Below are positions 2,972 through 56,823 of a stretch of DNA of 64,000 nt, one piece after another. The notes under the pieces were generated by a model. It made no database searches. It was not told where the DNA came from and saw nothing but the letters and a program-made list of their open reading frames with translations. How positions within the stretch are numbered: position 1 is the stretch's first letter; each line of letters starts with the position of its first letter. The position numbers and the translations under genes are program-made. Origin of the DNA: Euprymna scolopes (Eukaryota); NCBI GenBank assembly GCA_053919585.1, contig CM132810.1; one strand, 5' to 3'.

Positions 2972-3055
2972 CTTAGAGTTTTCTTGTAGTCTTCTCTCTT
3001 TAGTTTCAGCAGTTTTTCTTCCAGAACGTTCTTCTTCTAATTCATGTTCCAAAGT
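2972..3055 (-). CDS. CIT: CIT-like exon, 28-aa repeat (TLEHELEEERSGRKTAETKERRLQENSK)
   Basis: ttccatcag acceptor, GTAAGC donor, 84 nt, phase 0-0. Confidence 0.85.
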
Positions 3056-6000
3056 CTGATGGAATGAAAAGTTTAAATTGTTATTGCAAATATATGTGTC
3101 TGAGAGAAAGAAAGATTGTTTGGATTGAAAGTGGAACCACTTGATCAATCATTAGATAATTACACGAGGAAAATAATGTTTATTAAAACTATTCATTTTG
3201 TTGTGTTTTGTCTCTACATTATTAAAAGGTGCAAGTACAAAGTTCAACCTAATTAAAAAAAGAAATATACAGAAAAATTATTATGTACTCATGATGGAAT
3301 GAAAATGTCACATTCCAAAAAATGTGAATTGATCAAGTAATTTTATTTCATATTTAGAAAATTATTTTTTTACAATTTTTAGGGATTTTAATTGTAAATC
3401 ATAGCCATTAACAAGGCTTATTTTGATTTTGGTAGTTTGAATTTAGTCGTCTCCTTTTGTTAAAATTGGCAAATCAAGACATCTTGCTTCCTCATAAAAC
3501 TTAATATTCTTAGTTAAAAAACAAACTTTCTCAATTTATATGATTTTTGGAATATGACATCTTTGTTTTGTAACAAATACATACATCAATACATTCTGTA
3601 TTTTCTGTATCTTTATTTTTTTTGATTAAGTTGAATTCTTGACTTGCACCAAATAAAATTATCACTTCTCATGTATGCGTTTTTCATCTATGTAACAAAC
3701 AATATTAATTTACTATTAATTGATTGTTTATTAAAATCAAAAATACAGTAGTGATAAAACATTTTTAAAATACTATTTTTCTATTTAAGAAAATAATCAC
3801 AAAATTAAATCAACCACAATCCAAATCAACTATTTTAATGCATTTCTGTTTAAGCTTTCAACATTTGAAAAAAATTTTGAAAGCATTTAAACTACTGAAT
3901 AGAAAATGATTTCAGTTTTGAAAATTCTTAGCAAATTCTCATGTATTAAGTTCAGTTTTTAAAGCTATTTTACAAAGATTAAAATATTATTTTAACAAAA
4001 TTATTAGTTATAGCTTCATGAGAATTTGATTCAATTAATGATTTAATGACAAAACAATGCTGTAAAAATTAACTTTTAAATATTCCATTAAAAAAATAAA
4101 ATTGTTAAAGCAAAACAAAACATAAGATTTATGTATGTGTTTATTCATTTTTTTCATTTGTCCAACTACTACCAAAAGGTGCTGTAACAGTTCACAGTGA
4201 AGGGCAAATAGTATCGGAGGTGGTGAAAAGAGGATGGAAAATATATTAAACAGAAAAGGTTAAATGTTTATCCTGTCCACTCACCCTAACTCTATCAGCA
4301 AGCCGATGTTCTTTATTTTCCAATATCTTCTTTGAAGATGTAACCTGCTCCAAATCAATTTCAAATTTCTACATAAAAGAGAAAAAAAAGAAAATTGATC
4401 AATTTTATATAATTATGTTATTAATTCAATGCCAGATAGGTGTACTTTCATACCACCACAGCAAAATAAATTGTTTCTACTGATCGGTCAATAAAACAAA
4501 GTACAAATCAAAAATAAGACAGGATAGTACAATCAAGTATAATATAAATTGAAATTTTTTTTTCAATTTTATTAATTAAACAATAAAATAAGTCAGTTAT
4601 TAGACTGCATACCTCAGCCTGAGAATGTAAAGATGGACAAAAGTCTTATCTGAGCCTTACTTCTCCAGGTTGTATGAAGCCCAGAGTTATGCCATAGAAA
4701 CATTGATAACTCAAACACTACTTATTTGATCAAACTGAAATTTTTTTACATGCTAGTTATTGCTATCAAAGAGCATCATATCTATATATCAAATGTGGAA
4801 AAATTGTAGGTTGAAATTCCGTCAACATTTTAACCAGTGTTTAACTTTTCATAATCAAGGTCAAGGGTAAGATAAGATGTGGGGCTTCATCAGCTACGAT
4901 ATGGGCTAAATGGTGAGTCTCTACAATGAACAGAAACAAAGTTATCTTCAAAAGTATGATTTGTTTTCCATGACTGACATACATATCCCAAAATTATATC
5001 AGTTTTTAGTTAGACCATGACTGATATTTTAAACAAGTTTGGTGATGATTGGTCAAGTGATGTAGCTGTACTTGAGAAAACAATGGCAAACCAACAAATA
5101 AACTCTACTGAAAATATAACCTCCTTAGCTAAGATAAAAACAATTTAATTTTTCAATATTCATGGTTAATTCAAATAGTAAATAAAATACTTTTTACTCA
5201 AGGTAATATTTTTTGCATGGTAAGATTAACAACTGTCATACTGCCTGTAATATACAGGATTAGAAAATCTGACAAAGAGTAATAATTCTTGATATATCAA
5301 GGATTTTTGATGGAGTTAGGCACAAAGGTTTGTTTCACAAGCTTGCTAGCTATGGAATATCTGGAAATATCTTTTCAACTATTTCTTTCTCACTAATAGA
5401 TTCATAAAAGTAATTATTGATAAGCAGTAGTCTAATGCATATTGCATCAATGCCAGCATACCTCACCGATCTATTTTGGGCAAACTCTTTTCTTAATATT
5501 AATTAACATTTCCAAGAGCATTAACAATCAAGATCATTGTGATCCTCTCTTTTCCTACCTCGATCATATTGTGCAATGGGGAAAATGTTAGTTGGTTTTA
5601 ATACATTTAAAAATCAAGCTTCTCTCCATTCATAACTGACACTTTGATCCTCACTTTACTACAGTTGAAATGGGTGGCATCTTCCTTAAGAAGGTTCCAT
5701 TTTGATAAGCTTCTAGGATTGGTCTTCACTCCAAACCGTGAGTGAAAAACATGAGATTTGTTGCAAAGGTTGTTAGAAAACTAGTTGGATCTACTGCTTC
5801 AGAAGGTATAATTCTCCTGACACAATTTTCTGCCTGTAAAGAGTCAGCTATGTCCTAAGATTAAGTAATGGTGCCACATCAGAGGAGGTGCTTCAACAGA
5901 GTACAAAATTGTTTTCAAAATCTAGTGAGGGAGGTCAATCTCATCATTACAGCTTTATTACAGTAGAGACATTGCTTGTCTCTCTCTTATTTTTATTGCA

Positions 6001-9000
6001 TGTGCTCAACTGAGCTCCAATCTCTGGTTCCTTTTTGTAAAACATTCACACCAAGAACTTGTCAGTAACAGCCAACATAAGGAATATTCCTTTCTTCCAT
6101 TGTGTACCTGGAGCTAAGCAAATCTTCTATGAGCAGAATTTCTTTCTGTGGAACACAATACCACATGGCTGTTTTCCAGCTGAATACAACAGGATTATTT
6201 TTAAGTCTATTGTTACTAAGTTCTTGTTGAGTTGTCATTTTAACTGATCAAATTCTGCCCAAATCCAATCCATCATCTGCAATCCTTATGGTATCAGTCT
6301 CACCTGACATAAATCATTAATCCTTTTCATAGAGTGATCTTTAGGCTTTGATGAGCAGTGACTCTAGCATATGCAGATAAGAGCAAATAGTTATAAAGTA
6401 TTTCTATAAAAAGTTAATAAAAGAAAGTGAAAGAAAACTAATGTTCAATGGTATTAAAAAAATATTGAATAAATCAAAAAACTGTTCAATTTAAGCATCC
6501 TATTCTGATTTATTTAGGATCAAAAGAAAAGTTCAATATCTTACCCGTAATTTTTCCACCATTTCTTTTTCATTAGCTTCTAAGATTTTACGTCCGGCAT
6601 TAACATGATCCAATTCAGTTCCCAATGTCTGAAAAAATATCATTCAATTAGAGAAGAAAGATTTTGATTAAATTACCAGCAAGTATGAAAAGAGAAACCC
6701 TCTACCAAAACACTATTCAGAGAGAATGACATCAGCTCCAACAAATATGAACTAAAGACCAAAGGACACCACCCGAAAATTCACCACAGTTTGTATACCA
6801 CACATGAAGGGCTTGTATGAAAAACTTTAAAGTAGCAATACCAGACCATTTTTTTTTCTTTACATCCAAAAAATTCAAATTAAGCATTATTGAAAAGAGC
6901 ATTAAAAAAGAAATATGGTCTGAAGTCTTTTAAAAATCGGTTCATTAGAACTGGAATTATAACTATTCAAAGTATCGGAAACTGCATGGTTCACCGGAAA
7001 TTTAATCTTAAGTCAGTCCTATTCAAATGCATATAAGCTTGTGATTAAAAATGGTAAGAAATTTTCACCATTTACAGAACTATTCATCTTTAAAAAGCTG
7101 TATCTTCAGATCTCTTTCAAAATATTATGATGAAATTTTGAACACATTATCACAATACCTTGAAGATGGCTGTACTTATGACCATCTCATTTGGTAATTT
7201 ACATACTAATTAGTATATTTAAGTTTCATTTTAATGACTAAGTAGAAACATAAAAAAAAAAAAAAAAAAAAAAGGTAGGTGAGGCTTTATCATCAGATGA
7301 AGTATTATTCTGATGGATATTAACATTTGTCACTGTGAAAAATCCAAGATCACGATCAGGAAATCCAAGATGGCAACTGGAAAATGCAAGATGTCCACCA
7401 TGACCAGATTCATAAAAAGTTTTAACAAAATATGGCTTGTAGCATATCAAATTGAAGGAAATTTTGTACAGATGTGATTATGTTTTAAAGCACATAAAAC
7501 TATGTCCCATTATTAAAAATTGCAGTATTGTAAGTATTTTCTGTTTTATATATGACTTTGGAGGAAACATCATGGCTAAAGAATATAAGCTGTGAACTAT
7601 TATCAACCACCTAGTGGAGTTTGTAGCAAGCATAATCTAAAAATACTGAAATTTGTAGGAATCAGATTTTGCAGCTCATTGTACAATGAATTCTTCAAGA
7701 TTTCTTAATTTTAATTTTCTTCTTTTTCTAATCAGTTTATGAACTTTGATTCTCAATGTATTGAGTTATTGAATATAATACTGTAAAATTTCCAGCATAT
7801 TGAAAATGTTTTAAATGGGTATGGAAATCAGAAAGTTTTCAAATGGATACATTCTTCAATTAATGGGAAAATTTGCCACAAATCATTCATTTAAAAAATC
7901 TCATGTTATCAGTTCTTGTTACCATTCCTAACAATGCGTACATAAAAAGTGTTCAACCGATTCTCTTAAAACTTTTAGGACATAAGAAATTATTATCAAA
8001 TGCTGTTGGAACAAAGTTTCTATCTTAACTTAGATACTACAAAACTGAAAATTTGAGATATTCTAACTTAACTGAAAAGATGCTAGTGTTTTGTTCAAAT
8101 TCTCTAGCAATGACAATTCTTTTGCCTGATTGACTAAAAAAAGATATGAAACTTCATTAACTGGTAGAATTTTCATATGTGAAGAGACCCGACCGCATAG
8201 TTGCAAAAAGTCATCTACGGTTAGCAGGCATGCAATACTGGCATACTTCATTGTAAGTCATCAGATTTAAATAGCAATTTCTTGGAATATACAAATCACA
8301 ACAAAAATATCAAAATACCATTTTAAAGAAAAATTTATTGTGAACAGAGTCATATAAGTTTTATTTTGATAGATGAAGAAGAAATTTATTAATTACTGCT
8401 TTAAAGACTAAAATTCTATGATTGTTAGGTAAAGTAGCGGTGTGAACCTTGTCCAGTACTGAATAGTACATTTTCTAATAATAGTATTCAGGAATGATTC
8501 GACTGAAAACAGCTTGTGCGAATCAAGCCTCCTATAAAAGAAAAAATCATGACTAAGAATGTTGTGTATGAGATCACTTGTAAATGTGGAAAACTATACA
8601 AAAGGTGAGACATATCGTTCACTAAGGGTGCAAAGAACATCAAAAAGCATGGAGAGATTGAAAAGTTGGATATGGCTGACCATATATAGAGGGTAAAGAG
8701 AAACCATCTATCTTTACAGAACAAAATCAAAATTATAGACAGAAAAAAATAATGGATGGTAAGAAAACTCAAAGAAGGGGTAATGATCAATTACTAAGAC
8801 TTAATATAAAATTTAACAATACGAAAATCATTAATTAGAAATAATATATATAGACCTGCACTGGTTAGAATACTTGGAAAAATCAATTGTAAAAAGTAAT
8901 ATCCTTCTGAAGGTTGAAGATTCAATCTTCAGTGTAGGCGACTGAAAAATACAATCGCGAATTACTTACAACCACTATCATAAGTCAGGGTTAATTGAAC

Positions 9001-12000
9001 GAGAACATGCTACTCCTGTGTTGTTTGAAATTTTGTTCAGATTCCTGAGTTCGACAAGATACAGCTGAAGAAGATTGCAGGTTACGTAGATAGAAACATT
9101 ATGAAAATGACACTCAAAATGAGAACGGTTGTCCAAAAAATCCAAATATGATTAAGAGTGAATAAAATGAGAAGTAGCAGGAGGAAAGGTAACAATGGGA
9201 ATATTCAACCCAAAATTTTCAATTTAATCCTTCTAACAAGGCAGTATATTTTCATTTTATCTTCAATCAAACCTAAAAATAAATTTCACAAAATGATATA
9301 AAAGAACACACTGATTATTATTGAGTTGTTTTAAAATGTCGCAATGAATGGAAAGAATTGTCTTGTTACTAAAAAACCAAGTGAAGTCTTTATCTGTTAA
9401 AATAAAACGAGTTCTCTTCTAATATACAAAACAGAAGGAAAAATAAGATATTATAATTATTTACAATTTCCAGATTGGTTCCCTTATCTTAGCTTTGTTA
9501 TCATATTTCAGATGCTTTGCAATTAAGGCTTCTTTAGAGGTCTTGTATTAAACTCGAGAATGTTAAGAAATAATAATCTAGTCAGTAGGCCAAGTATCAA
9601 GATAAACATGAGGTCCTCTAACCGAGGAGCAAGATGAATACGTTTATGAATCTAAGTTGACATATGATGCAGCTTTTGGAGTCTAGTATCTCCCAAGGAA
9701 AGATGGATTTATAGCTTTCCAAAGAATACTAGTAAAAGTGATGTAATCGCCAACATGATACGTCAATAACCACAGTTGGTTTTGTTTTATGCATATTAAC
9801 TTTTTTCATGTTATTTAATATCAAATCCAGTTATTTTGTAAAAGTTTTCAAACTTCAAGTTATTAATATCTTCAAATATTTCTTCATGATGAAAATGTAT
9901 ATTTTTCTGTACGCATATATTTTATGAATAGCTTGTAAATTGTAAATTCTATTTAACAAATAGATGGGACTACTATCACTCTAGCACCTGGAAATAATGG
10001 CAACTAAGATGATTATTCTATTCCCAAAGCTTATAAATTAGGGTTTTAACATCAATTTAGAATTATACCTAGCATAATTATGGCTCCACTTGATTAATTG
10101 ATAGGGTAAGAAAACAGAGTGGGTAGAAAATGTAAATCATAAAGGGTTAAAAGAAGATACATTTTGGAGGGTCGTGCCAGAAACTGAATTAGTCGTTTAC
10201 AACATTCTAACACACACAGTGTGTATGCATTGAAAGCCCAAGAAAATAATGATTTACCTTTAGTTCATTCTGAAGACGATATTCCTTGGTTTCAAGGAGT
10301 TTATTATCCACATTCTCCTGGTCCACTTGATTTTCCAGTTCCTGAAATGTAAATATTCAAAAATTAAATTAAAATTTCACTACCATATTTGATACGGTGT
10401 TGAGAGATTGTAATGAGTTATGCAAACTGAAAGTAAGTTAACTAAAAAATGGTTACACATGAATAAAATTTTAACAGTTTCTACAAGAATCAACCTTTCA
10501 ACAGCAACCAATGAAAACATTTTACCATTTCTTGAATCCATTTAAAGCATTAGTGATACTTAAGATGACAATCCTCAGTAATCATAAGTTACATTAAATA
10601 TGATTTTAATTTCATATTATTGTGTAAAATAAATTTTAAATTTTAGTAAAAACAAGTAGTTTTTTATTTAAGATTTTAAAACTTTATGAATATTTAAATC
10701 ATGACATATTTACATAAATCTACACAAGTGTAAAATTTTATGATAATCATTTGCAAAGTCCTTTTGAAAATGTGCGAATTTTAAAATTAAAAAAAAAAGT
10801 ACCTGTTTTCACTAAAATTTGAAATATTTTTTTTTTATTTATTTATTTATTTATTTTTTTTTTTTTACACACAAAAGATTGAGGTTGATCCAATGAACAA
10901 CCACATGCATATCACGCATAAATGTCCTTCACTTAGATGATTAGATACACTTAGAATATACACTGGGAATCAAGTGAGCGGTGCCTGGGCAACCCAAAGA
11001 GTTCTTGCTGGTCAGGAAAACAATGTGTGGCATACCATTTCCTCCATGTTCCATTCCACGAGGCAAACAATGTAATAAAACCATGAGGCAAGTAAAGAAA
11101 TGGATGTTAAGAACCAATACAAGGCAAGTATACGTCACCCGTACAAGTCTATTGTGCCCTTCTGTAAAATTTCTACTGAGGTAGGAGCTAATTAATGAGA
11201 GACTTGTACAAGTCACAGTTCCTAATGGTTTTCTTTCTTCAGTTATCATAAGAAGCATCTTTCATAATAATGATTCAAATGATCATTCCTGCCATCAACC
11301 ATCTTGGAGAAAATTGTTAATTTGTTGGTAATTACCATAGAAGAGCTGTTAAACTTGCTGCTAATCAGTATTTTAATAATATCGTTTAAGTGAAATTTTA
11401 AAAAGACGCAAAGAACTGAAAAAGAATATTCAAAATATTTCAATATTTAAAAATATAAGAAACAACTTTGGTGAAGAGAAACTATGTTGTTTGTCTTTCA
11501 AGGCTACAATTAACAATGTGATTTGGATATTTTTCTTTTGGACGGAATGCTAGACAATTACAGACGAACAATAAAGATAATCATTTTAATTTAATTTCAT
11601 TGACTTAAACATGGATTTATTTTCTTAACTATGAATTGCTTGTGGCTTTCATCAAAAGGGACATGAGGCGAATCTAAACATACTTGTCTAGATGATGTAA
11701 CAATCATTCTGTTCTACAATTTAAAATTACAAACTAACTAAAAATTCTTCTAAGTCACATAATCAAATTAAACATTGCCTCATATCAACAGGTGAATCAA
11801 GAGATCAAGCTACATTGATCACAGTTGATATTATGCATTTTGGCCAATCATTTTACCAAATGCCAAAAACATTTTACTTTGATTATTAATAATTGTACAC
11901 TATATGAAGATATACATCTGAAAAAAGAAAGAAAGAAATGTTTGATACCTTTATTCTTGCAAGTAACTGCTGTTCTTTTAATTTTTTTCCTTGTTCTATT

Positions 12001-15000
12001 TCATCCAGCATTTTCTCTAATTCCTGACAAGAAAATAAATTATTAAAAAAAAGAAAATGTTAATACATTCCAAAGTAAGAATGAGCAATTTTGCTTCATA
12101 AATATTAATCTTAAGATTCAATTAAAATGTCTAAATTAACTTATCTAAAAGAAGTATACCTTCAGAATTTTGAAGATAGAGATCAGCATTTCTGATAATT
12201 AAGACAACTGTTTAACAGTAATCTGAATAACACAGGTGCTTATTCATAATTAAAATTGATTAATAAATCAAAAATGCAGAAAAATCCTTATGATATATGT
12301 ACCTGTCACAGAATGAAAATGTCATATTAGAAAAATCATGCAAATTAATTAAGTAGTTTTAGTTTTATAAAGAAAATCCAAATTTACGATTTTTAGTAAT
12401 TAATAATTTTGTAGTTGTGGCAGTTCTCAACTCCATTATTGTATCTTCATAAAATCTGATTTTCTTATTTGAAAAATAAATAAATCAATAAATACTCAAT
12501 GAATTTATGTGATTTTTGGAATATAATATCTTCAATCCATGATGGGTATATACATTACAAAGATTTTTTTTTTGAAAGTGTAATTCTAAATAAGCATCTA
12601 CGAATATACGATCATCGTTCCAAAGAAAACCCACTCAAACATTCATATTTAATACTTTTACTCAATAAAAAAGCCCATTGCCTTTTTTATAGTCAATAAA
12701 ATCAATTAAAATTATCATATTTGATTGATACGTAATAAATAGTGTTAACAATAGAATTCATTTTTTTTTTATTAACTTACATAGTTATCCAAAATATTAT
12801 TAAAAATTAAATTGTTCCTGACAAATTAAAATTTTTAAGTTAGTTAAAAAAATAATTTTTGTGATGTTTTGAAGGAAAATCACAAGTAGAGCACGAGTTG
12901 TCTCCTCCTATAATCACTTAGTTGAATAGTGTAATTTTTTTTTTTTTTTTTATAATTTAAATTCAATTTTCAGTCCAAACAAGACACAGTGCCACTTTGA
13001 AGTAGGGGGCTACTACCAGGGACATAAGTTGTAGGGATATTATGAAGGGAGATGAGTAGCAAGATGTCTGTTCACATTACACTTCTGTAAGTCAGTACAG
13101 TTAGGAAAGCAAAATCCCGGAAGGGAGTTCCAAAGTCTAGAAGTTCTGGGGAATAAACTATTGAAATATAAGATTTTCTTACACCTAGGGATCTCTACTG
13201 TGTAGGGGTTGGATTTTGCTGTTTGTCGGGGGTATTTACATCGAGGGGGTACAAGTTTGTAGTTTGTCAGAGCATTCACCATTAAAGTACTTGTAGAACA
13301 GGCAGAGGAATGCAACATTTCGTCAATGGGACAGAGGCTGAAGTTTACATGACTGTTCAGGACCTATCAGGTTGGTAACTCTCTTTAAAACCATGCCCAG
13401 GAGTGAGAGACAAGTAGCAGATGCACCAGCTCAAATGTTACAACAGTACACCATACATGGGCGAATAATGGCCTTATAGAGGTATAAGATACTTTCAGGC
13501 GTAAGTAGCTTTTTAGCACAGTAGAGAGAGCCCACCTTCTTTGCAGTAGCCTTGGCAATGCTCTTAATGTATCTGCTCCAATTCATGTTCCCTAGGAACG
13601 TTAGACCAAGGAGTTTAAAGGAAGTACTTTCAGATGTGTTTTTGGCCATTGCTATTGGTGGTAGAGAAGGTTTCTTGTAATTATTGAAGGAAACAAGCAT
13701 TGAATGAGACCATCCATTTTTGCCCCGATTCCACTACAGATTAGAGGTCTTCATCTAGTGTTTCTGCCATTTCCTTAGATATGTGCTCATTCGTTTTCTC
13801 CTCGTGCCTGTTATAGAGCATGGTGTCATCCGCAAATATACCCATCTCAGAAATGTTCAGTAATGAACCATTCATTAGATTAGAGGGGAAAACTACTTTT
13901 CTGAAAAAACACAATTTTTGTCAATTGTGATTAAGTCTCCGAGAGTGCACACCACAGTCTTCTAGTTATTTTAAGTAAATAACTATTAGTTCCAACTTTC
14001 CATAAAGTAATGAAGAAAATTTCAAAAATTTGTAAAGAATTGCAATTTTAGGCCATTTTCGCTCACTAGAGAACAAACCAGAGTTTTTTGAAAGTCTTCT
14101 TTTGTCAGTTGTCTGCATTCATGGTCATTGACATCTTTTTGTGAAAAACTAATAAAACAATAATGGAATAATAGACTAAAAGACTGGCAAAAACATGTTG
14201 TTTCTGATTAACAGTGGAGACTAAAAAAAACAAAAAGAAAAATTAGAGGAATTAAAAAGGAAAATCTTCCCAAACTGATTTATTTGCAGTTTGGCATATC
14301 TTTATATTAATAATCTTTTTTTTTGAGTTTCGTAATAATGCATACAATTTAATGTGTTAACATATCCAAAACCAAATATTCTCAAAATAATAAAATATTT
14401 TTTGACTGAGGTAATAATTTTTTTTTTTTTTTTTTTTTTTAACAAGGTAGTCACTACTTATCAAGGCCCGGAAGCCACTCGGGGATAAGGGTTATTGCGT
14501 TTACAGTATGTTAGTATTGCAGATTTGATAAAGTGTCTTATTTAAGGAGGCGGTTCATCAGGAATTTGTTTATGTTGGACATGAAGACATCCAGGTTGTA
14601 GTCAGGTGAGAAACAGGCAAACGGAACAGAGTTCCACAGGCGTACACTTCTAAGAAAGAAGCTTTGTTCATGGAATCTATGTTTTAGTTTTGGCACGGAT
14701 AAAGAGTGGGGAAACTTTTTGACAGTGGTTTCAGCTAGACGGATGTTTATCATATTATATTATCATATTAGCAAGGGGAACCAGAGATTGGAGCTCAGAC
14801 GAGCACTTGCCATGGAAGTAACGATAAAACAAAGACAGGCTCGCAATGTCTCTCCTGTGGGTTGGTTGGTTGTTTTTGTTTTACGGCATATCAACCCTTT
14901 TCAGGTTATTTAATGCCGAATCCAAAGATTTTGAAGAAAAAATTTTTTAATAGAATATATTTGTTGTTTTCACGTCGGTTTCTATTTAACCCATAGTTGG

Positions 15001-45000: not shown

Positions 45001-48000
45001 AACCATGGAAACGAGACAGATTGTCTACTTCTCCGACTCAATGGACAAACTGTTCTTGTCGAAGGAAGCATGCGTCGCCCTCGGGATGATACCAATCAGC
45101 ATCCTCATGATCAGTGAGACATCCAAAACCAACAATTCAAATGACGAAACAGATGTGTAATTGTCCCCATCATCAACAACCCTCGGCCCGCCCGACATTC
45201 TCTGGCCAGGAATGACCCTGGTTATCACTGAAATGAGCTCTCGCTGCTCTCCATGCAATCAGATGTCTCCATCGAACCCAAGCCAACCACCAACTCCTCC
45301 GGCTCTACCCGAATACTCGTTCCAGTGTATCACTGCGAACTACTTCACATTCCGTGGAAAACACTACCTTGTCAGCGTTGACAGGTACAGCAACTGGCTG
45401 AGAATTGAACAGGCGGTCAATGGTTTCAAAGGACTCATTTCAGCAATATGTCGCATCTTTGTAACATATGGTATTAGTGATGAAATAACATCAAACGGAG
45501 GACCTGAGTTCACTGCTCACGACACGCGTGATTTCCTTTACAATTGGGGTGTTCGCCACTGGATTTCATCTGTCGCATTCCTGCACAGCAACTGCCGCGC
45601 AGAAATAGGAGTCAAGAGTGTCAAGCGATTTCTCACGGACAACCCCGACATTGACGGTTCCCTCAACACAGACGCATTCCAGCGAGCCATGCTCATATAC
45701 CGCAACACTCCAGACCGTGATACCCTGCTGTCTCCGGCTATGTGTGTATTTGGAAGACCAATCCGGGATTTCATACCCATACATCCGGGAAAGTACCAAC
45801 CACACAGCACCTGGCGTGAAACTCTGGCATCGAGAGAGGAAACCCTCTGCAACTGCTACATGCGCATCTCTGAGCGGCTCACAGAACACACTCGTCCCCT
45901 GCCACTACTAGTCGTTGGTGACTGTGTGAGGATCCAGAAACAAATGGGACCTAACCCCAAGAAATGGGACAAAACTGGCATTGTCGTGAAGGTCCGACAA
46001 TTCGACCAATACGTTGTTCACATCGACAGCTCTGGCCGTGTTACGCTGCGGAACCGGAAATTCTTGCGGAAATACATGCCGGTGATTGAACACTCCCTAC
46101 TCCTGAGATAATCGGACCAACGCCTGTGTCCCACAGCCCAAGCAGTGCAACTGAACAGCCACAGCCAAACCAACCAACACCACTCACTAACACACCTTCC
46201 GAGCAAAAGGAACACCCAGCAGATACCACTGTCATGCCTCTCAACCCTGACCCAGCATTTGTTCAGTCAGCCCCCGCGATTAGAGAAACCAGCGGGCGAG
46301 CACAAACAGAAGATCCCTATGGCTCTTCAGGGTCTGATGCCACACAACGCCCCCGGCCTACAGGAACGCCCAGTGTCTCTGCCTGACTCAGACACCGCAC
46401 AGGAGCCTGTGGACACGTTGCCTTTATGTCAGTCAACCCGCCTCTCACACCTACCTGCCCAATTGAGTGTAGACTGAAACAGACTTTAAATCTCTAAATC
46501 TACTTCATGTACCAAGACATTTTATTAAGTTCACATGCCCAGATGGACCATTCGCATTTAGCTTAACTTATTACCTGGAAATCTTACAACACTCACACTC
46601 GTCTTTATGTCTTAAAGACTGGGAGGGGCATACATGATGTTGCTTTTCAGAAACCACTCTTCTATTTCATGTATTTCCAGATGCTGTAATCATTGGTTAA
46701 TAAAGAAGATTGACTAAAGAGTTGAAGCTCATCTATTAACTTTTGAAATTTATTTCACAATTACCATATTCAAGATTGTATACAACACAAGAATACATGT
46801 TAGGACAAAAAAAGATTTGATGGAAGTTTTTGTAAAACTTGAATTTGACAATACAAACTATGATTTATTATATGAAAAATATTTTTTAAAACCGACTCAC
46901 CATGAGTTCTTCTTCAAGCTGCTTTCGTAATCGACTTTCTCTCTCATACTTTTTAGTAATGTCCTTTGAAGGAATACAAAATAAATTGTATAGACAAATG
47001 GAAAATAAAAACTATATTGTAATATATTTGAGATGAGAAATTTTCATTATTTAAAATTTTTTGCCTCTTGAAAATTACCCAAACATCGCTGAAAATGTGC
47101 CAGTTATCTTGAGTTTCTGAGTCCAGTCATGAGTAAAGATAGCAAAATGATCAAACAACTAAAGAATCTTGCAAGGTCTAGAAAATAGAATGCGAAAAAT
47201 GTGTCCCTAAAGATAGAGTAAAGTATTGGGTTAAAAATTCCATAACAATTCCAGAGTACAAGTCACCCAATTAAGACGAGAGGGTAGTTTTACGGTTGGT
47301 TGGAGAGTGTTAAGATGAAGATTGGCATTTGGTTGACCTAGATGTACCTAACTTGAATTAAATAAAGGTCACCATTGTCCAAGGAAAACTCCAAAATCTA
47401 TACTAAAGTATAAATCAACTTTATTTCACTGGAACATCAGAAGATTTTTAAAAAATTGTTTGGTTGGCAGGTTTTCACTAAAAACAGATTGTGACATTCT
47501 GGAGTTCCATCTCGCCTTGCTGTTTCTAGCAACGGATGAGAATAGCTGCTGATGTTTTATATCTCATTCTGGAACTAATTTGTCTCTTTCCATTAATCGA
47601 GATGGGCATAAATCAACAGGCTACGAGTGCACATGTCAGTGGTGTGCTAGTCACCAGTGTATTAATACATGAAGCTGGGTAAGCTAATTGAACTACAATT
47701 CAATATAAGATTGCTTGTATAGACAATGGAAATTGATATGTCATGTAATTTTTACAAGGGCAAAACACTAGAAATCAAGCGTTCAGTTCAACATTTCCAG
47801 AAAAGCTTCTTTCTTTTGTAAATCTGTTCTTTAAATGACATGTACCAGATTCAGGCTGTTATCTTCATCTTAGTTGTTGTCATGGTTACATTAATTTTAA
47901 CCATTGTACTCTATGATAATCAACAAGTGCTTTTATTGTAGTCAGTATGTATTTTACTCAACACACAACCATATGGATGAAGGTTTTGGTCAAGAGATAT

Positions 48001-51000
48001 TCTAGAGTTAATTCTACCTGGAGGTTGCTAGTTCAAGTCCTTATGAAGGGACATAAAAGAAAAAAAAATTAAAAGGTATGGAACATGGGCCAAGAACTAA
48101 ACTAAAGGGATTAAATAAATGGATTCAGTTTAGAATTCCCATGCGGCTGAATAGGAACTTGAAAGCTAGAGAGTACAACAGCCAAAACGTGAGAATGGAA
48201 CCAACCAAGATGACAACAAACATGTAAATAACATGTAAATAACATGTCAATGATCACAGAAATATCATTAAATATTTTTTTGTTACAATCATTGTGGCAC
48301 TTTTAATGAGTTATTCAGCCTTGAATGTTTTATAATAGAAATTTTTAACTGCAAGATTTTCATAACCAAAAAATTCTTATTGTGAAAAGGTATGTTTAAA
48401 ATAGAATTTTATTTGTATTATTTGATCTTCTATTTTCATCTTGGTTGTTATATTCCCAACATTTCAGCTAATCTGACTTCGAATCTTCTTTGGGTGCATC
48501 TTTTTAAAATAAGGAACATTCTAGTCAAACTCCAGAACCTGGGCAGAATTTTTCAGAGAACCCTTTATTTAATTCATGCAAGTAGATTGTTCTTATTCTG
48601 TCAACCATTCTAAATTCTGCACCGGCTCCCAATTTTGATGTCACATTGATCAAAATATTGTAAACATAGCAAACAAGGATAGAAATCGGAATAAAAAACA
48701 GAAATTATCAATCCTTATCTCAAAAAACATATGATTTTATTATTTGTTAAACGTTTTAACAGTGGAAAATAAGTATTTTTCTAAACAAAATTAAAATCTT
48801 TAAAAGTTTAAGTATTTTTTACGAAAAAAAAAGTATTATCTTTATTATATTTTATTCATATTTTTTATTTATATAAACCCAATACTAAATGAATAAAAAG
48901 TATATACCTTATCAATATAGGAATCTGTTTGGTCATTTCGGTCATCTTGACAGTAATCACATTTTTTCTTTAACAACTGCTCATTCAGTTCCTACAAAAA
49001 AAGAAAAAATGGATTCATTGAGAAGAATTCTAAAACAATTACAAAGACAACAGTGGATCAATATCTTTATGTAAAAAAAATGAAAAAAAAAAAATGTAGT
49101 TTCTATCTATTTGTTCACAAGCTCTACCTTGAGTTCAAAAACATTCTTTTCCCATAATCATATATAGATTCTTACTCAGAATAGTATTTGGATAAGTATA
49201 TTTCATTTTGATTATAGAAGTACATTATCATGGGGCTTGTGCTCACACTTGACATCCATAAAATGGAAATATATTGTTTTACTTTATTTTAATTTAAAAA
49301 TTATAGAAATTACAAAATAGAAATGTTAAGGGGTTCAGAGGCCGGATTAGGAGTGAACATGGATTTTAGAAAGAATGCTAAGTACACACTTTGTCATTTT
49401 TTTTCTTTTTAAATTAAGAAATAGTCACCACTTATCCAGGCTATATACTATTTAAGGATAAAGGTTGATAAGATGGAATGATTGTCAAGACCAATTTCAA
49501 ATACAATTCTAAATAGAAATCTATTGGTACTGACTTTTAGTAGGATCAATATATGGAAAATACTCCCTCAACCTCCCAAAAATTCTAACAAAAGGTTTCT
49601 CAACTGATTATGGTAGGTTTTAATGTACTTTTTAATGTACTAAAAGTTTACAAAAGTATGACCCCTGGAAAAGTGTTTTTTTTTTTTTCAAAATGGCATC
49701 CAAGATGGCCTCCAAAACCGTTGAACGATCATAACTATAACTATCAACTCAAATTTGATGATCTCGGTGTCTATCCCTACATTTTTGGGGGGCAAAGAAC
49801 ACATTAAAATCATAAAAAATGATGTTGGCCTATTATGACTATGTGCCAATGTTTTGGGGGTAGAGGTGGCATTCTCCATATATTTGATTGGATCTAACTG
49901 TATAACTAATTCGCATCTTTCTCTATTTCAGATATGATTCAACAATGAGCGCAAGCACAGTCAAGCGTCTTGTCCAACATGCAAGGATTCCAGTGATAAC
50001 TGGGTTGCAATTCAGTGGAATGGGGCAAAAGTAATAAATGATGCCAGTGTAAAACAGAAAGACGATCTTGTAGTTGAAACTGGTATGAAAGTGTATAAAA
50101 GCTATTTGATTATTGGAATTCTTTTTGAGATGAATAATTTGTACATTTTTTTTTTGGTGAGACAACAACTACAGAAGGCAGTAATTACTGAAGATACTGT
50201 TGAAGATTCAGCATTCCTATCCCATCACAGTTAAATTAACAACCTGACAAGGACCAGGCGAATAGTTGGCCGAAATGTTGTGAAACAACATTAAAAGATG
50301 AGGATAATAGTCCGCAAATAAATAAAATGCATAAAAGCTGTCGTCAACAGTAAATTAATGTTAAAAATGTTAAAAGCCATGTTGCTTTTGTGTCAAGAAA
50401 GAGAACCACAAGAGGCTCAAGTGGAGCTTTTGATAGCGCAAAGGACTGCATATTCTGTGGATGTACAATTGATTTGGACAAGAGACACTTTAGCTGGGTA
50501 CGCACGGACAAATTTGTGGAAACAATTTTGGAGATCTGTGAATCCTGTTAAGATGATTGAGGCCACATTGCATACCATTTATAAGATTTACATGCAACAG
50601 ATGGCCTTTATCATAATCATGTAGTAGAAATTTTAGGAACCTCAAGTCTGTGCCTTTTGAGTTCCAGCATGCCCCTGATGCCAAGTGCAGAAAGCCAGGC
50701 CATCCTAAAGATGAAGAGAAGTATAAAGCATTTCAGAAAATGTGTGCTTAATTAAAACTGAACAAGTGAGGAACAACTAACTGTGACATCTTTGAGCCTC
50801 ATAATGAAACGTTATCTTTCCAATCCTGATTCTGAACCCTATGACAATTACAGTTTGAAAAAGCATCTTAAAGAGCACTTTAACAACTCAATCATATTTT
50901 CTGAAGGAGAAGGCTTGGACGATATTGTCACTATGAGAGAACAAACATTGCAGATTCTGAGATTATATTACAAAGGAAAGTGTCAGGAAGATGATGAAGA

Positions 51001-53715: not shown

Positions 53716-53769
<54 letters not shown>

Positions 53770-56700
53770 CCAATTTGGATGTTGCTCCAATATGTCATTT
53801 AAGTGGTCTATGTAAATTGTGGGTTGTGTGTTAGATTTGGTGTATTTTGATAGGTTTAGAATGATTTTAGGTTGTTTTAGTGACCAAGGACGATGTTCAG
53901 GGAATTTCGATTTATGTATGTTGTTTTTGCCTATTCGACAGTTTTCTAGTAAATGTTCCATTTTTAATCCAAAAGTTTTTATCTTATTTTTTTTTTTTTT
54001 TTTTTTTTTTCAAAAGACACCAAGATCATCAAATTTGAGTTGATAGTTATAGAGTTATGATCGTTCAAAGGTTTCAGTGGCCATCTTGGACGCCATTTTG
54101 AAAAAAAAAGCACAATTTTCCGGGAGGCATACTTTGGTAAACTTTTAGTTTGTTAAAAAGTACATTAAAACCTACCAGAATCAGTTGAGAAACCTTTTGT
54201 TACAATTTTTTTTTTTTGGGGGGGGGGGGGTAAATAGTACTTTGATCTGACTATTGGAATACAAGCAAGTTGTAATTTACAGGGAAGCAGCAATGTGGCC
54301 ATAATACCAACGTACATGCATCCACTTTATTGTTAAGCACAAATAATTCTTTCATTTCTAGCACTCATATAAAAAACAAAAAAAAACATTTCAGAGTTCA
54401 TAGCTGATTTGTGATTGTTTAGTCTTAAAAACCGTTTTTGTTTTGTTTTTGTGTGTATATGTGGATGGTAATTAGGTGTCTATTAAAATGAATTGGATGT
54501 TATCTACTGTACATTCTGTTTGCTTGAAATGTTGGAAGCCAGATAATTTTTGCTGATATGAAGTTTGGTTATTAAACCTAATATCCAATAGTGGATACAT
54601 AGGTGAAACAAAATTAGCTTTTAGTCTTGGTTTAATAGTGATACAAGTAGTCAATGGTAAAAAAAGCTGAAATTGAGATGAATTTTCCAACCTGGAGGCC
54701 ATGGTCCCGTGTGTGCATGGAGAGAGGGTAAGATAAAAAAAACAACTTTTTTCTAAATTAAAGTCAGTTGCAAGTAAAAAAAGTCAAAATTAAAAAAGAA
54801 AGATGTTAAGTGCATATGTGGAGGAAAGAACAAGTCATCATTCTTTATGAAACAACATCTAACTTCCCTATCCTTTTCACAGTTTAAAATTTTAGCCTTC
54901 ACTTGAAAATTATTTTTGGAGAAAACTGTCACAAGCAGAAAAATCAACTTTTTCTTATTTAAAAAAAAATCAACAAATAGAAGAGTCTAGTTGTTGAAGC
55001 AGAAATCTGCTTTTTCTTAAAATAAAAAGTGGATCTCCACTAAAAAGTAGAGAACTCACATTTCTGATTTAATAAGCACAAATAATTTTGGCAAAAGCAA
55101 AGGGAATTTGAAAGAAACCGGATTTTTAATATTATTCGAGCCACTTCCACAAGATCTCTTCATTGGATGTTATGTGCATATCTGATTATCATAGCTTTAG
55201 TGAAGTCAAAATTATGATTAAATTCAAGCATATGCGAAATAAAAACATTTTTGACATTGCACAATCGAAACAGCTGATTACAGACTTAAACAATATTCAA
55301 GCAATGACGTGGTTTCTTTCAAATTTGTCTTACTCCCACTAAAAACATAGTAATAGGAAATGCTACATTCATGCACAATAGTCAAGTTGCCTATTAATTA
55401 TGATTTACTGCCTGCCTGTGGCACTTCTACTCTAGCGTAATGTCCTCAACCGCAGCAATAGCATTTACATTCTTTTCTCCTACGAACCATGTATGTATAG
55501 TTAGTCTCCAACATGCCGTTTCTTTTCAAGAAGTTAACATATATGCGTTCATCTCATCGTGAATTATTATTAACAGAAATAATTCCTTCAGCAAATAAAG
55601 TTTCAATTCCAAAACAAAATCCTTACTAATCGGCAAAAAATCAGACAAAATTAAAAACTGTTAAATAAAAAAAAAACATTATTTTACAAGCCGAGTGCAT
55701 ACTTTTGTTATGTGTTCTCACCTGAATATAATCCTGCAAATCATTGATATGTTGTTTCTTTATCTCAATCTGTTGTTGCCACATTTCTTCTGCATTTTGC
55801 AATCGGGACAAATCTTTTCTCTGATCTTCTAATGACCTTCGTTTTTCCTTAAATAAACAAAATAAAACAAAAGGAGAAAAAAAAAAAATAGAATTATCTG
55901 CGAACACACATCTGATTCATCCAGAAAAACTATCAGTGACATTCCTGGATTAACCAAGTGTTTCCGGTCTTCCAACATCACACACACTACACCAGATGAC
56001 CCAGTTCAGGTTGATCAGACAGTAGCTCATCATATCGAAATGGTTAGCTACTATGGCACTCATGATTCATTATTTTTTTTTTAGCCACAACCATTTTCAG
56101 AATCACTCTCTCTTTCAGTAGTACAGTATGCTCTTCCATGTGGACATAATTTCAGCATAAGTTTTTTGGGAAATAAACAAAAAATCAATAGAAATACCAA
56201 ATAGACAATTAAAAATTTAATCAGTTGCTTTAACACACATATCTTTTGACCTTGGTTGGCTAATATATTATTCAATTAAGGAGGAGCAATAGGTTGCTGT
56301 TAGCACAGCAGGATAGCCTGTTGTTCTCTTCGGAGATAGAGGAGCAGAAGATTTTTATTTTATCACAAATATTTTATCAACAGAAAAAACAATTTTCTAC
56401 CCTGCATTCCCATGAAATAAAAACAAAAGGCTTCTTTTCTAAAATGACAAAATGCTTGTATGAATCTCAAATAACAGCTTTTTTTCTTTTTTTAACAAAG
56501 GAATCACCACTTATCAAGGCCTGGAGGCCACTCGAGGATAAGGGTTAATGTGTATACATTAGTCAATAGGATTATAAGATAGTTATCATAAATAGTGGAA
56601 ATTTTGTAAATTAGATTAGTTAGGGGGACGGTTCATCAAGAACTTGTTTACGTTGGACTTGGAGACTACCAAATTGTAGTAAGCTGGAAAGCAGGCAAAC

Positions 56701-56823
56701 GGAAGAGAGTTCCGCAAGCGGGCAGTTCTAAGAAAGAAGCTTTGTTCATGGAATTTACGTTTAGGTTTAGGCACGGATAAAGAGTCTGGGAAATTATTAA
56801 TAGTGGTTTTGGCTAGACAAGTG

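What the first reader, a model, noticed from the sequence alone, without database searches (positions are those of the whole stretch)
2972..55847. Coiled coil built from 13 consecutive symmetric, heptad-sized exons: a possible splice-tunable molecular ruler
Seen: all 13 exons from 55847 to 2972 are phase 0-0, with lengths of 42, 28, 21, 35, 25, 42, 22, 28, 25, 28, 28, 28 and 28 codons. Ten are exact multiples of 7, and the others fit heptad plus hendecad sums (25=14+11, 22=11+11). Most end in hydrophobic-K/R and start x-hydrophobic, so junctions fall at the same heptad position. Known: citron kinase is a midbody scaffold, and rod length in this kinase family sets the spacing between kinase and C-terminal domains. 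Inference: skipping any heptad-multiple exon keeps both frame and coiled-coil register, so rod length could change in modular steps by splicing or by exon gain and loss.
Basis: partly seen in the sequence, partly recalled or inferred. Interest (0 to 1): 0.72.

Follow-up and report, generated by a model that had tools for sequence, protein, structure and literature searches.

The report
Heptad-registered exon modules in cephalopod citron kinase
The coiled-coil stalk of a cephalopod citron-kinase gene is built from 13 in-frame exons that all start and end at the same coiled-coil position. Several are recent copies of one 28-codon exon, which has made the stalk about 50% longer than in most animals, and relatives show that some of these exons can be skipped.

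Summary
Thirteen minus-strand exons (55847 to 2972) have canonical splice sites (one GC donor), are all phase 0-0, and have exactly the stated codon lengths. With four upstream exons they tile an mRNA of a related cephalopod without gaps, apart from a 12-nt indel inside exon 3.

A simple register model that did not know the exon borders places every exon start at heptad c and every end at b. The stutters and the skip lie inside the three non-multiple-of-7 exons.

The gene is the citron kinase (CIT) orthologue. Phase-0 dominance is a family trait: 50 of 62 rod introns in four outgroups. Uniform heptad-multiple modules are not. Exons 8 and 10-13 (exon 9 weakly) belong to a 28-residue, one-unit-per-exon array found only in cephalopods. 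The kinase-to-C1 spacer is 889-996 residues from cnidarians to vertebrates but 1444-1472 in cephalopods.

Splicing is supported only in relatives. Octopus RefSeq isoforms lack exactly the orthologues of exon 1 (42 aa) and exon 5 (25 aa) and two downstream 28-aa units. One of those 28-aa units is also present or absent in assembled mRNAs of a second lineage. No RNA data exist for this genome, and the ruler function is untested.

The parts
63732..63909 (-). Exon U1 (178 nt, phase 1 to 2): AGC-kinase C-terminal tail with the hydrophobic motif
   Evidence: Pkinase_C E = 8.9e-6. Same 178-nt length and phases as Lingula exon 8 and Antedon exon 7. Tiles mRNA L005 1271-1448.
62342..62600 (-). Exon U2 (259 nt, phase 2 to 0): Ser-rich linker and start of the rod
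   Evidence: The Lingula counterpart is 256 nt and the Antedon one 253 nt.
60790..60917 (-). Exon U3 (128 nt, phase 0 to 2)
   Evidence: Identical length and phases in Lingula, Owenia and Antedon. Tiles the mRNA.
58572..58734 (-). Exon U4 (163 nt, phase 2 to 0)
   Evidence: Identical length and phases in Lingula, Owenia and Antedon. Tiles the mRNA.
55722..55847 (-). ex1, 42 codons, phase 0-0. An old exon, and a cassette exon in Octopus annotations
   Evidence: Its profile hits Mya 548-588 (iE 2e-5) and the 42-codon phase 0-0 exon 15 of Owenia. It is absent from O. sinensis X3, O. bimaculoides X5 and both O. vulgaris models.
48908..48991 (-). ex2, 28 codons, phase 0-0
   Evidence: No outgroup counterpart was found.
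46901..46963 (-). ex3, 21 codons, phase 0-0 (25 codons in three other cephalopods)
38360..38464 (-). ex4, 35 codons, phase 0-0
35376..35450 (-). ex5, 25 codons, phase 0-0, with an internal stutter. Its orthologue is skipped in O. bimaculoides isoform X2
   Evidence: The ex5|ex6 junction matches the Lingula exon 15|16 and Owenia exon 16|17 junctions.
28763..28888 (-). ex6, 42 codons, phase 0-0. The best-conserved rod exon
   Evidence: 71-88% amino-acid identity to the relatives.
25054..25119 (-). ex7, 22 codons, phase 0-0, GC donor, internal skip residue
22642..22725 (-). ex8, 28 codons: a diverged member of the 28-residue repeat family
11949..12023 (-). ex9, 25 codons (a 28-unit minus 3): a weak family member
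   Evidence: (iE 0.92).
10258..10341 (-). ex10, 28 codons: repeat unit 1 of the clear array
   Evidence: 79% identical to Octopus X1 883-911.
6545..6628 (-). ex11, 28 codons: repeat unit 2
4285..4368 (-). ex12, 28 codons: repeat unit 3
2972..3055 (-). ex13, 28 codons: repeat unit 4. The array continues beyond the low end of the window
   Evidence: No further unit lies in 1-2971. Relatives have at least 4 more clear units.

Best explanation
The window holds the kinase tail and the first 380 rod residues (about 56 nm if fully helical) of a cephalopod citron-kinase (CIT) gene on the minus strand. An earlier scan note, not verified here, calls the genome cuttlefish.

The rod is encoded by phase-0/phase-0 exons, each a self-contained heptad module running from position c to position b. 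Two processes produced this.

1. Inheritance. CIT rods in all animals examined have about 80% phase-0 introns. These often sit at Lys/Arg|Glu codon borders that resemble the AG|G proto-splice site. The 42-codon ex1 and the ex5|ex6 junction predate cephalopods.

2. Tandem duplication of a 28-codon (four-heptad) exon in the cephalopod stem. This gave ex8-ex13 here and more units beyond the window. Together with other insertions (ex2-4) it lengthened the kinase-to-C1 spacer from about 950 to about 1450-1470 residues.

Because every module is in frame and in register, exon loss, gain or skipping changes rod length in steps of about 3-6 nm without breaking the heptad seam. Shown: the exon model, the register, the paralogy, the lineage restriction, the longer spacer, and cassette behaviour of four modules in relatives. 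Inferred: that this species also skips some modules, and that the length steps matter for function.
For: - Exon model: validated by contiguous tiling of a related mRNA and by gap-free exon-by-exon alignment of four cephalopod CITs.
- Register: Viterbi c-to-b for all 13 exons at two jump penalties; a/d hydrophobic occupancy 58/69%; autocorrelation peaks at lags 7, 14, 21, 28 and 35.
- Paralogy: in-register BLOSUM scores of 23-56 against -17 to +16 at shifts of 7, 14 and 21 residues; shuffle z-scores of 2.1-6.1, and 4.5-6.1 among ex10-13.
- Lineage restriction: the repeat profile finds 8-9 units in each of 4 cephalopod proteins and none in the other 62 metazoan CITs scanned, including 17 bivalves and 11 gastropods.
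- Gene identity. Exon lengths 178/259/128/163 nt match 178/256/128/163 in Lingula.
- Outgroup controls: phase 0 in 50 of 62 rod introns, multiples of 7 in 10 of 42 symmetric exons, and heterogeneous junction registers.
- Spacer length: 889-996 residues in most of seven non-mollusc groups, 1444-1472 in cephalopods.
- Cassette exons in relatives; mRNA contigs.
Against: - No RNA data exist for this species; the four runs found are low-coverage DNA.
- All four full-length mRNAs of the nearest relative include all 13 exons.
- The Octopus isoforms are computed RefSeq models, and I could not inspect their read support.
- The register model is home-made and crude.
- Core positions 13 and 20 of the 28-mer are polar, so parts of the array may be weak coiled coil or single-helix-like.
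- Exon borders inside the Octopus array could not be read, because the gene spans 272 kb and no DNA was served.
- ex3 has 25 codons in relatives, so the multiple-of-7 count drops to at most 9 of 13 there (8 in Octopus, where ex2 has 29 residues).
Confidence: 0.8

Rival explanations
1. Regulated splice-tunable ruler. Cells choose among rod lengths by including or skipping modules, and this sets the kinase-to-membrane or midbody spacing.
For: - The same 28-aa cassette is present or absent both in Octopus RefSeq isoforms and in assembled mRNAs of a distant second cephalopod lineage (53% identity over the rod).
- The ex1 orthologue is skipped in two Octopus species.
- Spacer length is tightly conserved (about 950 residues) across most Metazoa, which suggests length matters.
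- ROCK2 function depends on coil length (PMC4686654).
Against: - There is no evidence on tissue or stage regulation.
- There is no evidence for this species.
- Only 2 of the 13 window exons have skipped orthologues.
- Mollusc spacers range from 1101 to 1991 residues, so length is not tightly held in this phylum.
- A ruler role for CIT is stated as open in PMC5082667.
Confidence: 0.2
2. Neutral by-product. The modules reflect exon duplication plus the family's phase-0 bias. The skipped forms are low-level splicing noise that survives because it is in frame, and so gets annotated.
For: - Phase-0 dominance means almost any skip in a CIT rod is in frame.
- Large in-frame rod deletions are also annotated in a snail (420 aa) and a starfish (233 aa).
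- All four full-length mRNAs of the nearest relative include ex1-13.
Against: - The identical 28-aa cassette recurs in two deeply diverged cephalopod lineages. In one of them each form is assembled as a full-length contig from separate runs, which is unusual for noise.
- Exon lengths are held gap-free across four cephalopods.
Confidence: 0.4
3. Ordinary ancestral CIT gene structure, with the same exons in all bilaterians.
For: U1-U4, the 42-codon ex1 and the ex5|ex6 junction are shared with Lingula, Owenia and Antedon.
Against: - ex2-4 and ex7-13 have no outgroup counterparts.
- Outgroup symmetric rod exons are multiples of 7 in only 10 of 42 cases, and their junction registers are mixed.
Confidence: 0.05
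4. Exon-model artefact: borders chosen to look symmetric.
For: One donor is GC rather than GT.
Against: All 17 exons tile a related mRNA contiguously, the GC-donor exon included.
Confidence: 0.02

Closest known systems
Citron kinase (CIT/CRIK; Drosophila sticky), especially the Octopus sinensis, O. bimaculoides and O. vulgaris and Argonauta hians proteins
   Same: Collinear exon by exon with 50-88% amino-acid identity. Same AGC tail, the same conserved 5' rod exons, and the same 28-residue array.
   Different: Another species. ex3 is 4 codons shorter here. The C1, PH and CNH parts lie outside the window.
ROCK2 coiled-coil 'molecular ruler' (PMC4686654; review PMC5082667)
   Same: Same DMPK-family layout of kinase, long parallel coil and membrane-binding end. 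Spacer length is conserved while sequence diverges in most phyla.
   Different: Length dependence has been shown for ROCK2 only. CIT spacers are expanded and variable in molluscs. ROCK is not reported to vary its length by splicing.
Fibrillar collagen genes with 54-bp exons (textbook knowledge, not tested here)
   Same: Exon length is a whole multiple of the structural repeat, exons are symmetric, and the array arose by exon duplication.
   Different: The collagen repeat is the Gly-X-Y triplet, not a heptad. Collagen exons are mostly constitutive.
Titin and nebulin repeat exons that are differentially spliced to set spring or ruler length (textbook knowledge, not tested here)
   Same: Tandemly duplicated symmetric exons whose inclusion changes the length of an elongated protein in modular steps.
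   Different: Those are Ig, PEVK or nebulin repeats rather than coiled coil, and their regulated splicing is well documented, which is not the case here.
28-residue charge repeat of the myosin II rod (textbook knowledge, not tested here)
   Same: A four-heptad super-repeat with occasional skip residues in a long coiled coil.
   Different: Myosin exons do not follow the 28-residue units, and no sequence relationship was seen.

Membership tests
Citron kinase (CIT) orthologue | AGC-kinase C-terminal tail with hydrophobic motif directly upstream of the rod | tested here: met
   Pkinase_C E = 8.9e-6 on window:63734-63907:-. The best full-length hits are CIT proteins.
Citron kinase (CIT) orthologue | Collinear similarity to annotated CIT proteins along the rod | tested here: met
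   O. vulgaris, Argonauta and a Logan mRNA product match 8-14 exons in order. The alignment is gap-free.
Citron kinase (CIT) orthologue | Shared intron positions with CIT genes of other phyla | tested here: met
   178/259/128/163 nt with phases 1-2, 2-0, 0-2, 2-0, against Lingula 178/256/128/163 and Antedon 178/253/128/163.
Citron kinase (CIT) orthologue | Kinase domain and C-terminal C1, PH and CNH domains | not testable with these tools
   These lie outside the 64-kb window. They are present in the relatives' full-length products.
Heptad coiled coil | 7-residue hydrophobic periodicity with an a/d seam | tested here: met
   Autocorrelation peaks at lags 7, 14, 21, 28 and 35. Hydrophobic occupancy at a/d is 58/69% against 8-22% elsewhere.
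Heptad coiled coil | Forms a parallel dimeric coil | not tested
   No structure prediction or experiment was done. Positions 13 and 20 of the 28-mer are polar.
Tandem exon-duplication array | Adjacent exons of equal length and phase | tested here: met
   ex10-13 are 84 nt each and phase 0-0. ex8 is 84 nt and ex9 is 75 nt.
Tandem exon-duplication array | In-register sequence similarity beyond generic heptad periodicity | tested here: met
   The shift-0 score far exceeds the scores at shifts of 7, 14 and 21 residues for all 10 pairs, though the margin is smaller for pairs with ex8. Profile iE values are 1e-10 to 1e-14.
Tandem exon-duplication array | Restricted to one lineage | tested here: met
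   8-9 units in each of 4 cephalopod proteins and 0 in the other 62 metazoan CITs scanned, including 28 other molluscs.
Tandem exon-duplication array | One unit per exon in other cephalopod genomes too | tested here: inconclusive
   The Octopus gene spans 272 kb and no DNA was served. Only the cassette borders (42, 25, 28 and 28 aa) show exon edges.
Cassette (alternatively skipped) exons | Symmetric exon whose removal keeps the frame | tested here: met
   All 13 exons are phase 0-0.
Cassette (alternatively skipped) exons | Transcripts with and without the exon in this species | not testable with these tools
   The only runs that hold the locus are unspliced low-coverage DNA contigs.
Cassette (alternatively skipped) exons | Transcripts or models with and without the orthologous exon in relatives | tested here: met
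   The ex1 and ex5 orthologues and two downstream 28-aa units differ between Octopus isoforms. One 28-aa unit differs between the 2514-aa and 2486-aa mRNA products.
Coiled-coil molecular ruler (ROCK2 type) | Spacer length conserved while sequence diverges | tested here: inconclusive
   889-996 residues in most of seven non-mollusc groups, but 1101-1991 in molluscs.
Coiled-coil molecular ruler (ROCK2 type) | Function depends on spacer length | not testable with these tools
   This needs cell-biological rescue with length variants. It has been shown for ROCK2 only (PMC4686654).

The most novel reading that the evidence does not exclude
Cephalopods rebuilt the citron-kinase stalk as a chain of interchangeable four-heptad exon modules. 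They use conserved cassette exons (28, 42 and 25 codons) to set stalk length in steps of about 4-6 nm in different cell types, for example dividing cells versus neurons. This would make CIT the first DMPK-family kinase whose 'ruler' is adjusted by splicing.
Probability: 0.15. Interest if true: 0.75.

Novelty: new variant of a known kind. Interest (0 to 1): 0.55.

Why it matters
Whether the long coils of ROCK, MRCK and CIT kinases act as length-critical spacers is an open question for CIT.

This locus gives two natural handles on it. First, a spacer held near 950 residues from cnidarians to vertebrates has been lengthened by about half in cephalopods, and by other amounts in bivalves and gastropods. 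Second, the added part consists of in-frame, in-register exon modules, some of which relatives include or skip. That makes length-function tests straightforward, using natural isoforms that differ by whole 28- or 42-residue blocks.

It is also an unusually clean case of exon borders locked to a coiled-coil super-repeat, the heptad counterpart of collagen's 54-bp exons.

Tried and rejected
1. RNA evidence for this species. The one run search found four runs, guessed to be RNA. Laid on 1000-6700, they are low-depth DNA contigs that cross exon-intron borders unspliced.
2. Hidden extra repeat exons in the introns or in 1-2971. Six-frame profile scans found none.
3. Genomic DNA for Octopus CIT. The gene range of 272 kb was too long to be served. 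Mya and Patiria proteins were not on record.
4. Literature on CIT cassette exons, or on heptad-phased exons in coiled coils. Nothing relevant was found.
5. I considered that Lingula exons 12-13 correspond to ex2-4 in a different order (a shared C-x-x-C and a basic Ser motif seen by eye). Profile searches gave no support, so I dropped the idea.
6. A first global-alignment script for the mRNA tiling was mis-parameterised and gave nonsense. It was redone with local alignment.
7. I recall that human CIT has isoforms of 2027 and 2069 residues, a 42-residue difference. This was not checked, and no human sequence was used.

The joined (spliced) protein model was never sent to any database search. Searches used single exons by reference. 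The joined form was used only inside local scripts, for register analysis and for alignment to proteins already fetched.


Full report
**Observation.**
They are 55847-55722 (42 codons), 48991-48908 (28), 46963-46901 (21), 38464-38360 (35), 35450-35376 (25), 28888-28763 (42), 25119-25054 (22), 22725-22642 (28), 12023-11949 (25), 10341-10258 (28), 6628-6545 (28), 4368-4285 (28) and 3055-2972 (28). All have polypyrimidine-AG acceptors. Twelve have GT donors and exon 7 has a GC donor.

Four further exons lie upstream: U1 63909-63732, U2 62600-62342, U3 60917-60790 and U4 58734-58572. The U3|U4 intron is phase 2, so the run of phase-0 introns starts at U4|ex1 and includes 14 introns up to the window's low end. 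No further exon was found in 1-2971.

**Validation of the exon model.**
No RNA data could be obtained for this genome. The four runs found hold the locus as low-depth DNA, with contigs crossing exon-intron borders unspliced.

A word search with the Octopus protein turned up a cluster of products of 8-11 kb Logan contigs, each with an uninterrupted 2486- or 2514-codon frame. These are mRNAs of a closer relative, from runs SRR29271463, SRR29271478, SRR29271479 and SRR29271484. Each of the 17 window exons aligns to mRNA L005 at 72-86% nucleotide identity (U2 71%). Their mRNA coordinates are exactly contiguous, 1271 through 3171. The only offset is 12 nt inside ex3. Four cephalopod CIT proteins align exon by exon without gaps, except for +1 residue in ex2 of Octopus, -4 in ex3 of this species and -2 in ex4 of Argonauta. 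The exon model is therefore sound, including the GC donor.

**Identity.**
The U1 exon is an AGC-kinase C-terminal tail (Pkinase_C). Searched alone by reference, it retrieved CIT proteins, named as such by their sources. Octopus vulgaris CIT is collinear with ex2-ex13. The exon lengths 178/259/128/163 nt and their phases match Lingula (178/256/128/163), Owenia and Antedon CIT genes, whose structures I derived from their own genomic loci. A follow-up note of this scan calls the genome cuttlefish; I did not verify that.

**Heptad register.**
I joined the exons only inside local scripts and ran a simple seven-state Viterbi model, with a/d hydrophobic scores and a penalty for register jumps. The model knew nothing of exon borders. 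At two penalties it placed every one of the 13 exon starts at c and every end at b. The discontinuities lie inside ex5 (stutter), ex7 (skip) and ex9 (stutter), the three exons whose length is not a multiple of 7. Hydrophobic occupancy is 58% at a and 69% at d, against 8-22% elsewhere. Hydrophobic autocorrelation peaks at lags 7, 14, 21, 28 and 35.

It follows by inference that removing any exon, not only a heptad-multiple one, leaves a continuous seam at the new joint. Nine of 13 exons end in AG and 7 of 13 begin with G. The recurrent Lys/Arg|Glu border therefore also reflects splice-site consensus.

**Is it more than chance, and is it special?**
I compared four outgroup CIT genes: Lingula, Owenia, Bulinus and Antedon. 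In these, 50 of 62 rod introns are phase 0, so 14 in a row has P of about 0.05 given the family bias. Phase symmetry is therefore a family trait.

By contrast, only 10 of 42 symmetric outgroup rod exons are multiples of 7, and their junction registers are mixed: b|c in 0-6 junctions per gene. Ten of 13 multiples here gives P = 8e-5 at the outgroup rate. With the duplicated family counted once (6 of 9) it gives P = 8e-3. In relatives ex3 has 25 codons, so the count is at most 9 of 13 there (8 in Octopus, whose ex2 has 29 residues).

**Origin.**
- Ex8 and ex10-13 are similar in register. BLOSUM sums are 23-56 at shift 0, against -17 to +16 at shifts of 7, 14 and 21 residues. Shuffle z-scores are 2.1-6.1.
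- A profile of the unit finds 8-9 consecutive units in each of four cephalopod proteins. It finds none in the other 62 metazoan CITs scanned, including 17 bivalves and 11 gastropods.
- Units pair by position between species; for example ex10 is 79% identical to Octopus X1 883-911. The duplications therefore predate the split of these lineages.
- The array continues past the window. Octopus shows eight clean 28-mers followed by a 25-mer and four more 28-mers.
- Ex1 is old. Its profile matches Mya 548-588 (iE 2e-5) and coincides with a 42-codon phase 0-0 exon in Owenia. The ex5|ex6 junction matches junctions in Lingula and Owenia.
- Ex2-4 have no detectable outgroup counterpart.

**Rod length.**
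I measured the distance from the AGC hydrophobic motif to the C1 finger.

| Group | Distance (residues) |
|---|---|
| Cnidaria | 889-946 |
| Echinodermata | 934-979 |
| Hemichordata | 973 |
| Non-human vertebrates | 981-992 |
| Most arthropods | 914-996 |
| Lingula | 953 |
| A nemertean | 990 |
| Bivalvia | 1123-1343 |
| Cephalopoda | 1444-1472 |
| Gastropoda | 1537-1991 |

The spacer is length-conserved in most animals and expanded, by different amounts and with different sequence, in all three mollusc classes. The exceptions outside molluscs were amphioxus (1088-1108), Owenia (1158), Tribolium (837) and a sponge (770). One Physella isoform (X6) measures 1101.

**Splicing.**
Isoforms in the Octopus cluster differ by whole modules.
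- O. sinensis X3 and O. bimaculoides X5 lack exactly the 42 residues orthologous to ex1. Both O. vulgaris models also lack them.
- O. bimaculoides X2 lacks the 25 residues orthologous to ex5.
- O. sinensis X2 and O. bimaculoides X3 lack a 28-residue unit (X1 1161-1188). X4 lacks another (1217-1244). X6 lacks both.
- In the closer relative, the 2514- and 2486-residue mRNA products differ by the orthologue of the first of these 28-residue units. Each form was assembled from separate runs.

All four full-length mRNAs of that relative contain ex1-13. Large in-frame rod deletions are also annotated in Physella (420 residues, which is 60 heptads) and in Patiria (233 residues). This shows that skipping in phase-0 rods is easily annotated and may partly be noise.

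**Comparison with what is known.**
ROCK2 function depends on coil length (PMC4686654). The review PMC5082667 states that it remains to be seen whether CRIK behaves likewise. A 2026 review gives CIT lengths of 2027 (human), 1854 (fly) and 1286 (worm) residues, describes only the kinase-less Citron-N isoform, and places KIF14 and MKLP1 binding in the coil. I found no paper on heptad-phased exons in CIT or on cephalopod CIT.

**Verdict.**
The architecture is best explained by family-wide phase-0 bias plus a cephalopod-specific tandem duplication of a four-heptad exon, which lengthened the rod by about half. Exon gain is shown. Skipping is shown only in relatives and for only two of these 13 exons. 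A ruler function remains a hypothesis.

**Limits.**
The joined spliced model was never sent to a search tool. No human sequence was used. Read laying was given 5701 letters.

Noticed in passing
window 25052-25053 (donor of exon 7, minus strand): A GC-AG intron: the donor reads gcaaga. The exon end is confirmed by the related mRNA.
   Followed up: partly
window 46901-46963: Exon 3 has 21 codons here but 25 in the closer relative, Octopus and Argonauta. A 12-nt in-frame indel removes a stutter-sized 4 residues in this species.
   Followed up: partly
window 43500-46500 (+ strand, intron 3): A GC-rich (51%) block with long ORFs. One gives a weak integrase-core (rve) match at E = 6e-4, below the Pfam cut-off. 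It is probably an LTR-retrotransposon remnant.
   Followed up: partly
window 32000-33000 (+) and 53217-53540 (-): A mariner-like transposase fragment (Transposase_1, E = 2.5e-3, weak) and an RNase H fragment (E = 4.7e-6), both in introns. Several introns also carry copies of one repeat family ORF (for example 14538-14753, 29939-30109, 56616-56774, 56975-57265).
   Followed up: partly
window 3483-3673 and 5966-6156: Depth in the DNA runs jumps to about 1000-4200 and about 110-210, against 0-7 nearby. These are high-copy short repeats inside introns 12 and 11.
   Followed up: no
P0192 (Logan contig of 7097 nt, closer relative): A kinase-less product: 39 unique N-terminal residues, then 99% identity to residues 1452-2449 of the full-length protein. 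This is a Citron-N-like short form that starts downstream of the whole 28-residue array.
   Followed up: partly
CIT orthologues P0196-P0307: The kinase-to-C1 spacer is held at about 890-1000 residues from cnidarians to vertebrates. It is expanded in every mollusc class: bivalves 1123-1343, cephalopods 1444-1472, gastropods 1537-1991. The cephalopod 28-residue repeat is absent from the other molluscs.
   Followed up: partly
P0272 vs P0273 (Physella acuta), P0124 vs P0201 (Patiria miniata): Annotated isoforms lack 420 residues (exactly 60 heptads) and 233 residues of the rod. The snail short form returns the spacer to 1101 residues.
   Followed up: partly
L001 exons 12-13 (Lingula), L003 exons 13-14 (Owenia): Two phase 0-0 exons (82-83 codons together) lie between the 163-nt exon and the 42-codon exon in these outgroups. 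They have no counterpart in cephalopods, where U4 joins ex1 directly.
   Followed up: partly
Octopus bimaculoides models P0151-P0162: The RefSeq gene appears to be split into an N-terminal model (1505-1561 aa isoforms) and a separate C-terminal model (1165 aa). This is probably an assembly or annotation break rather than biology.
   Followed up: no
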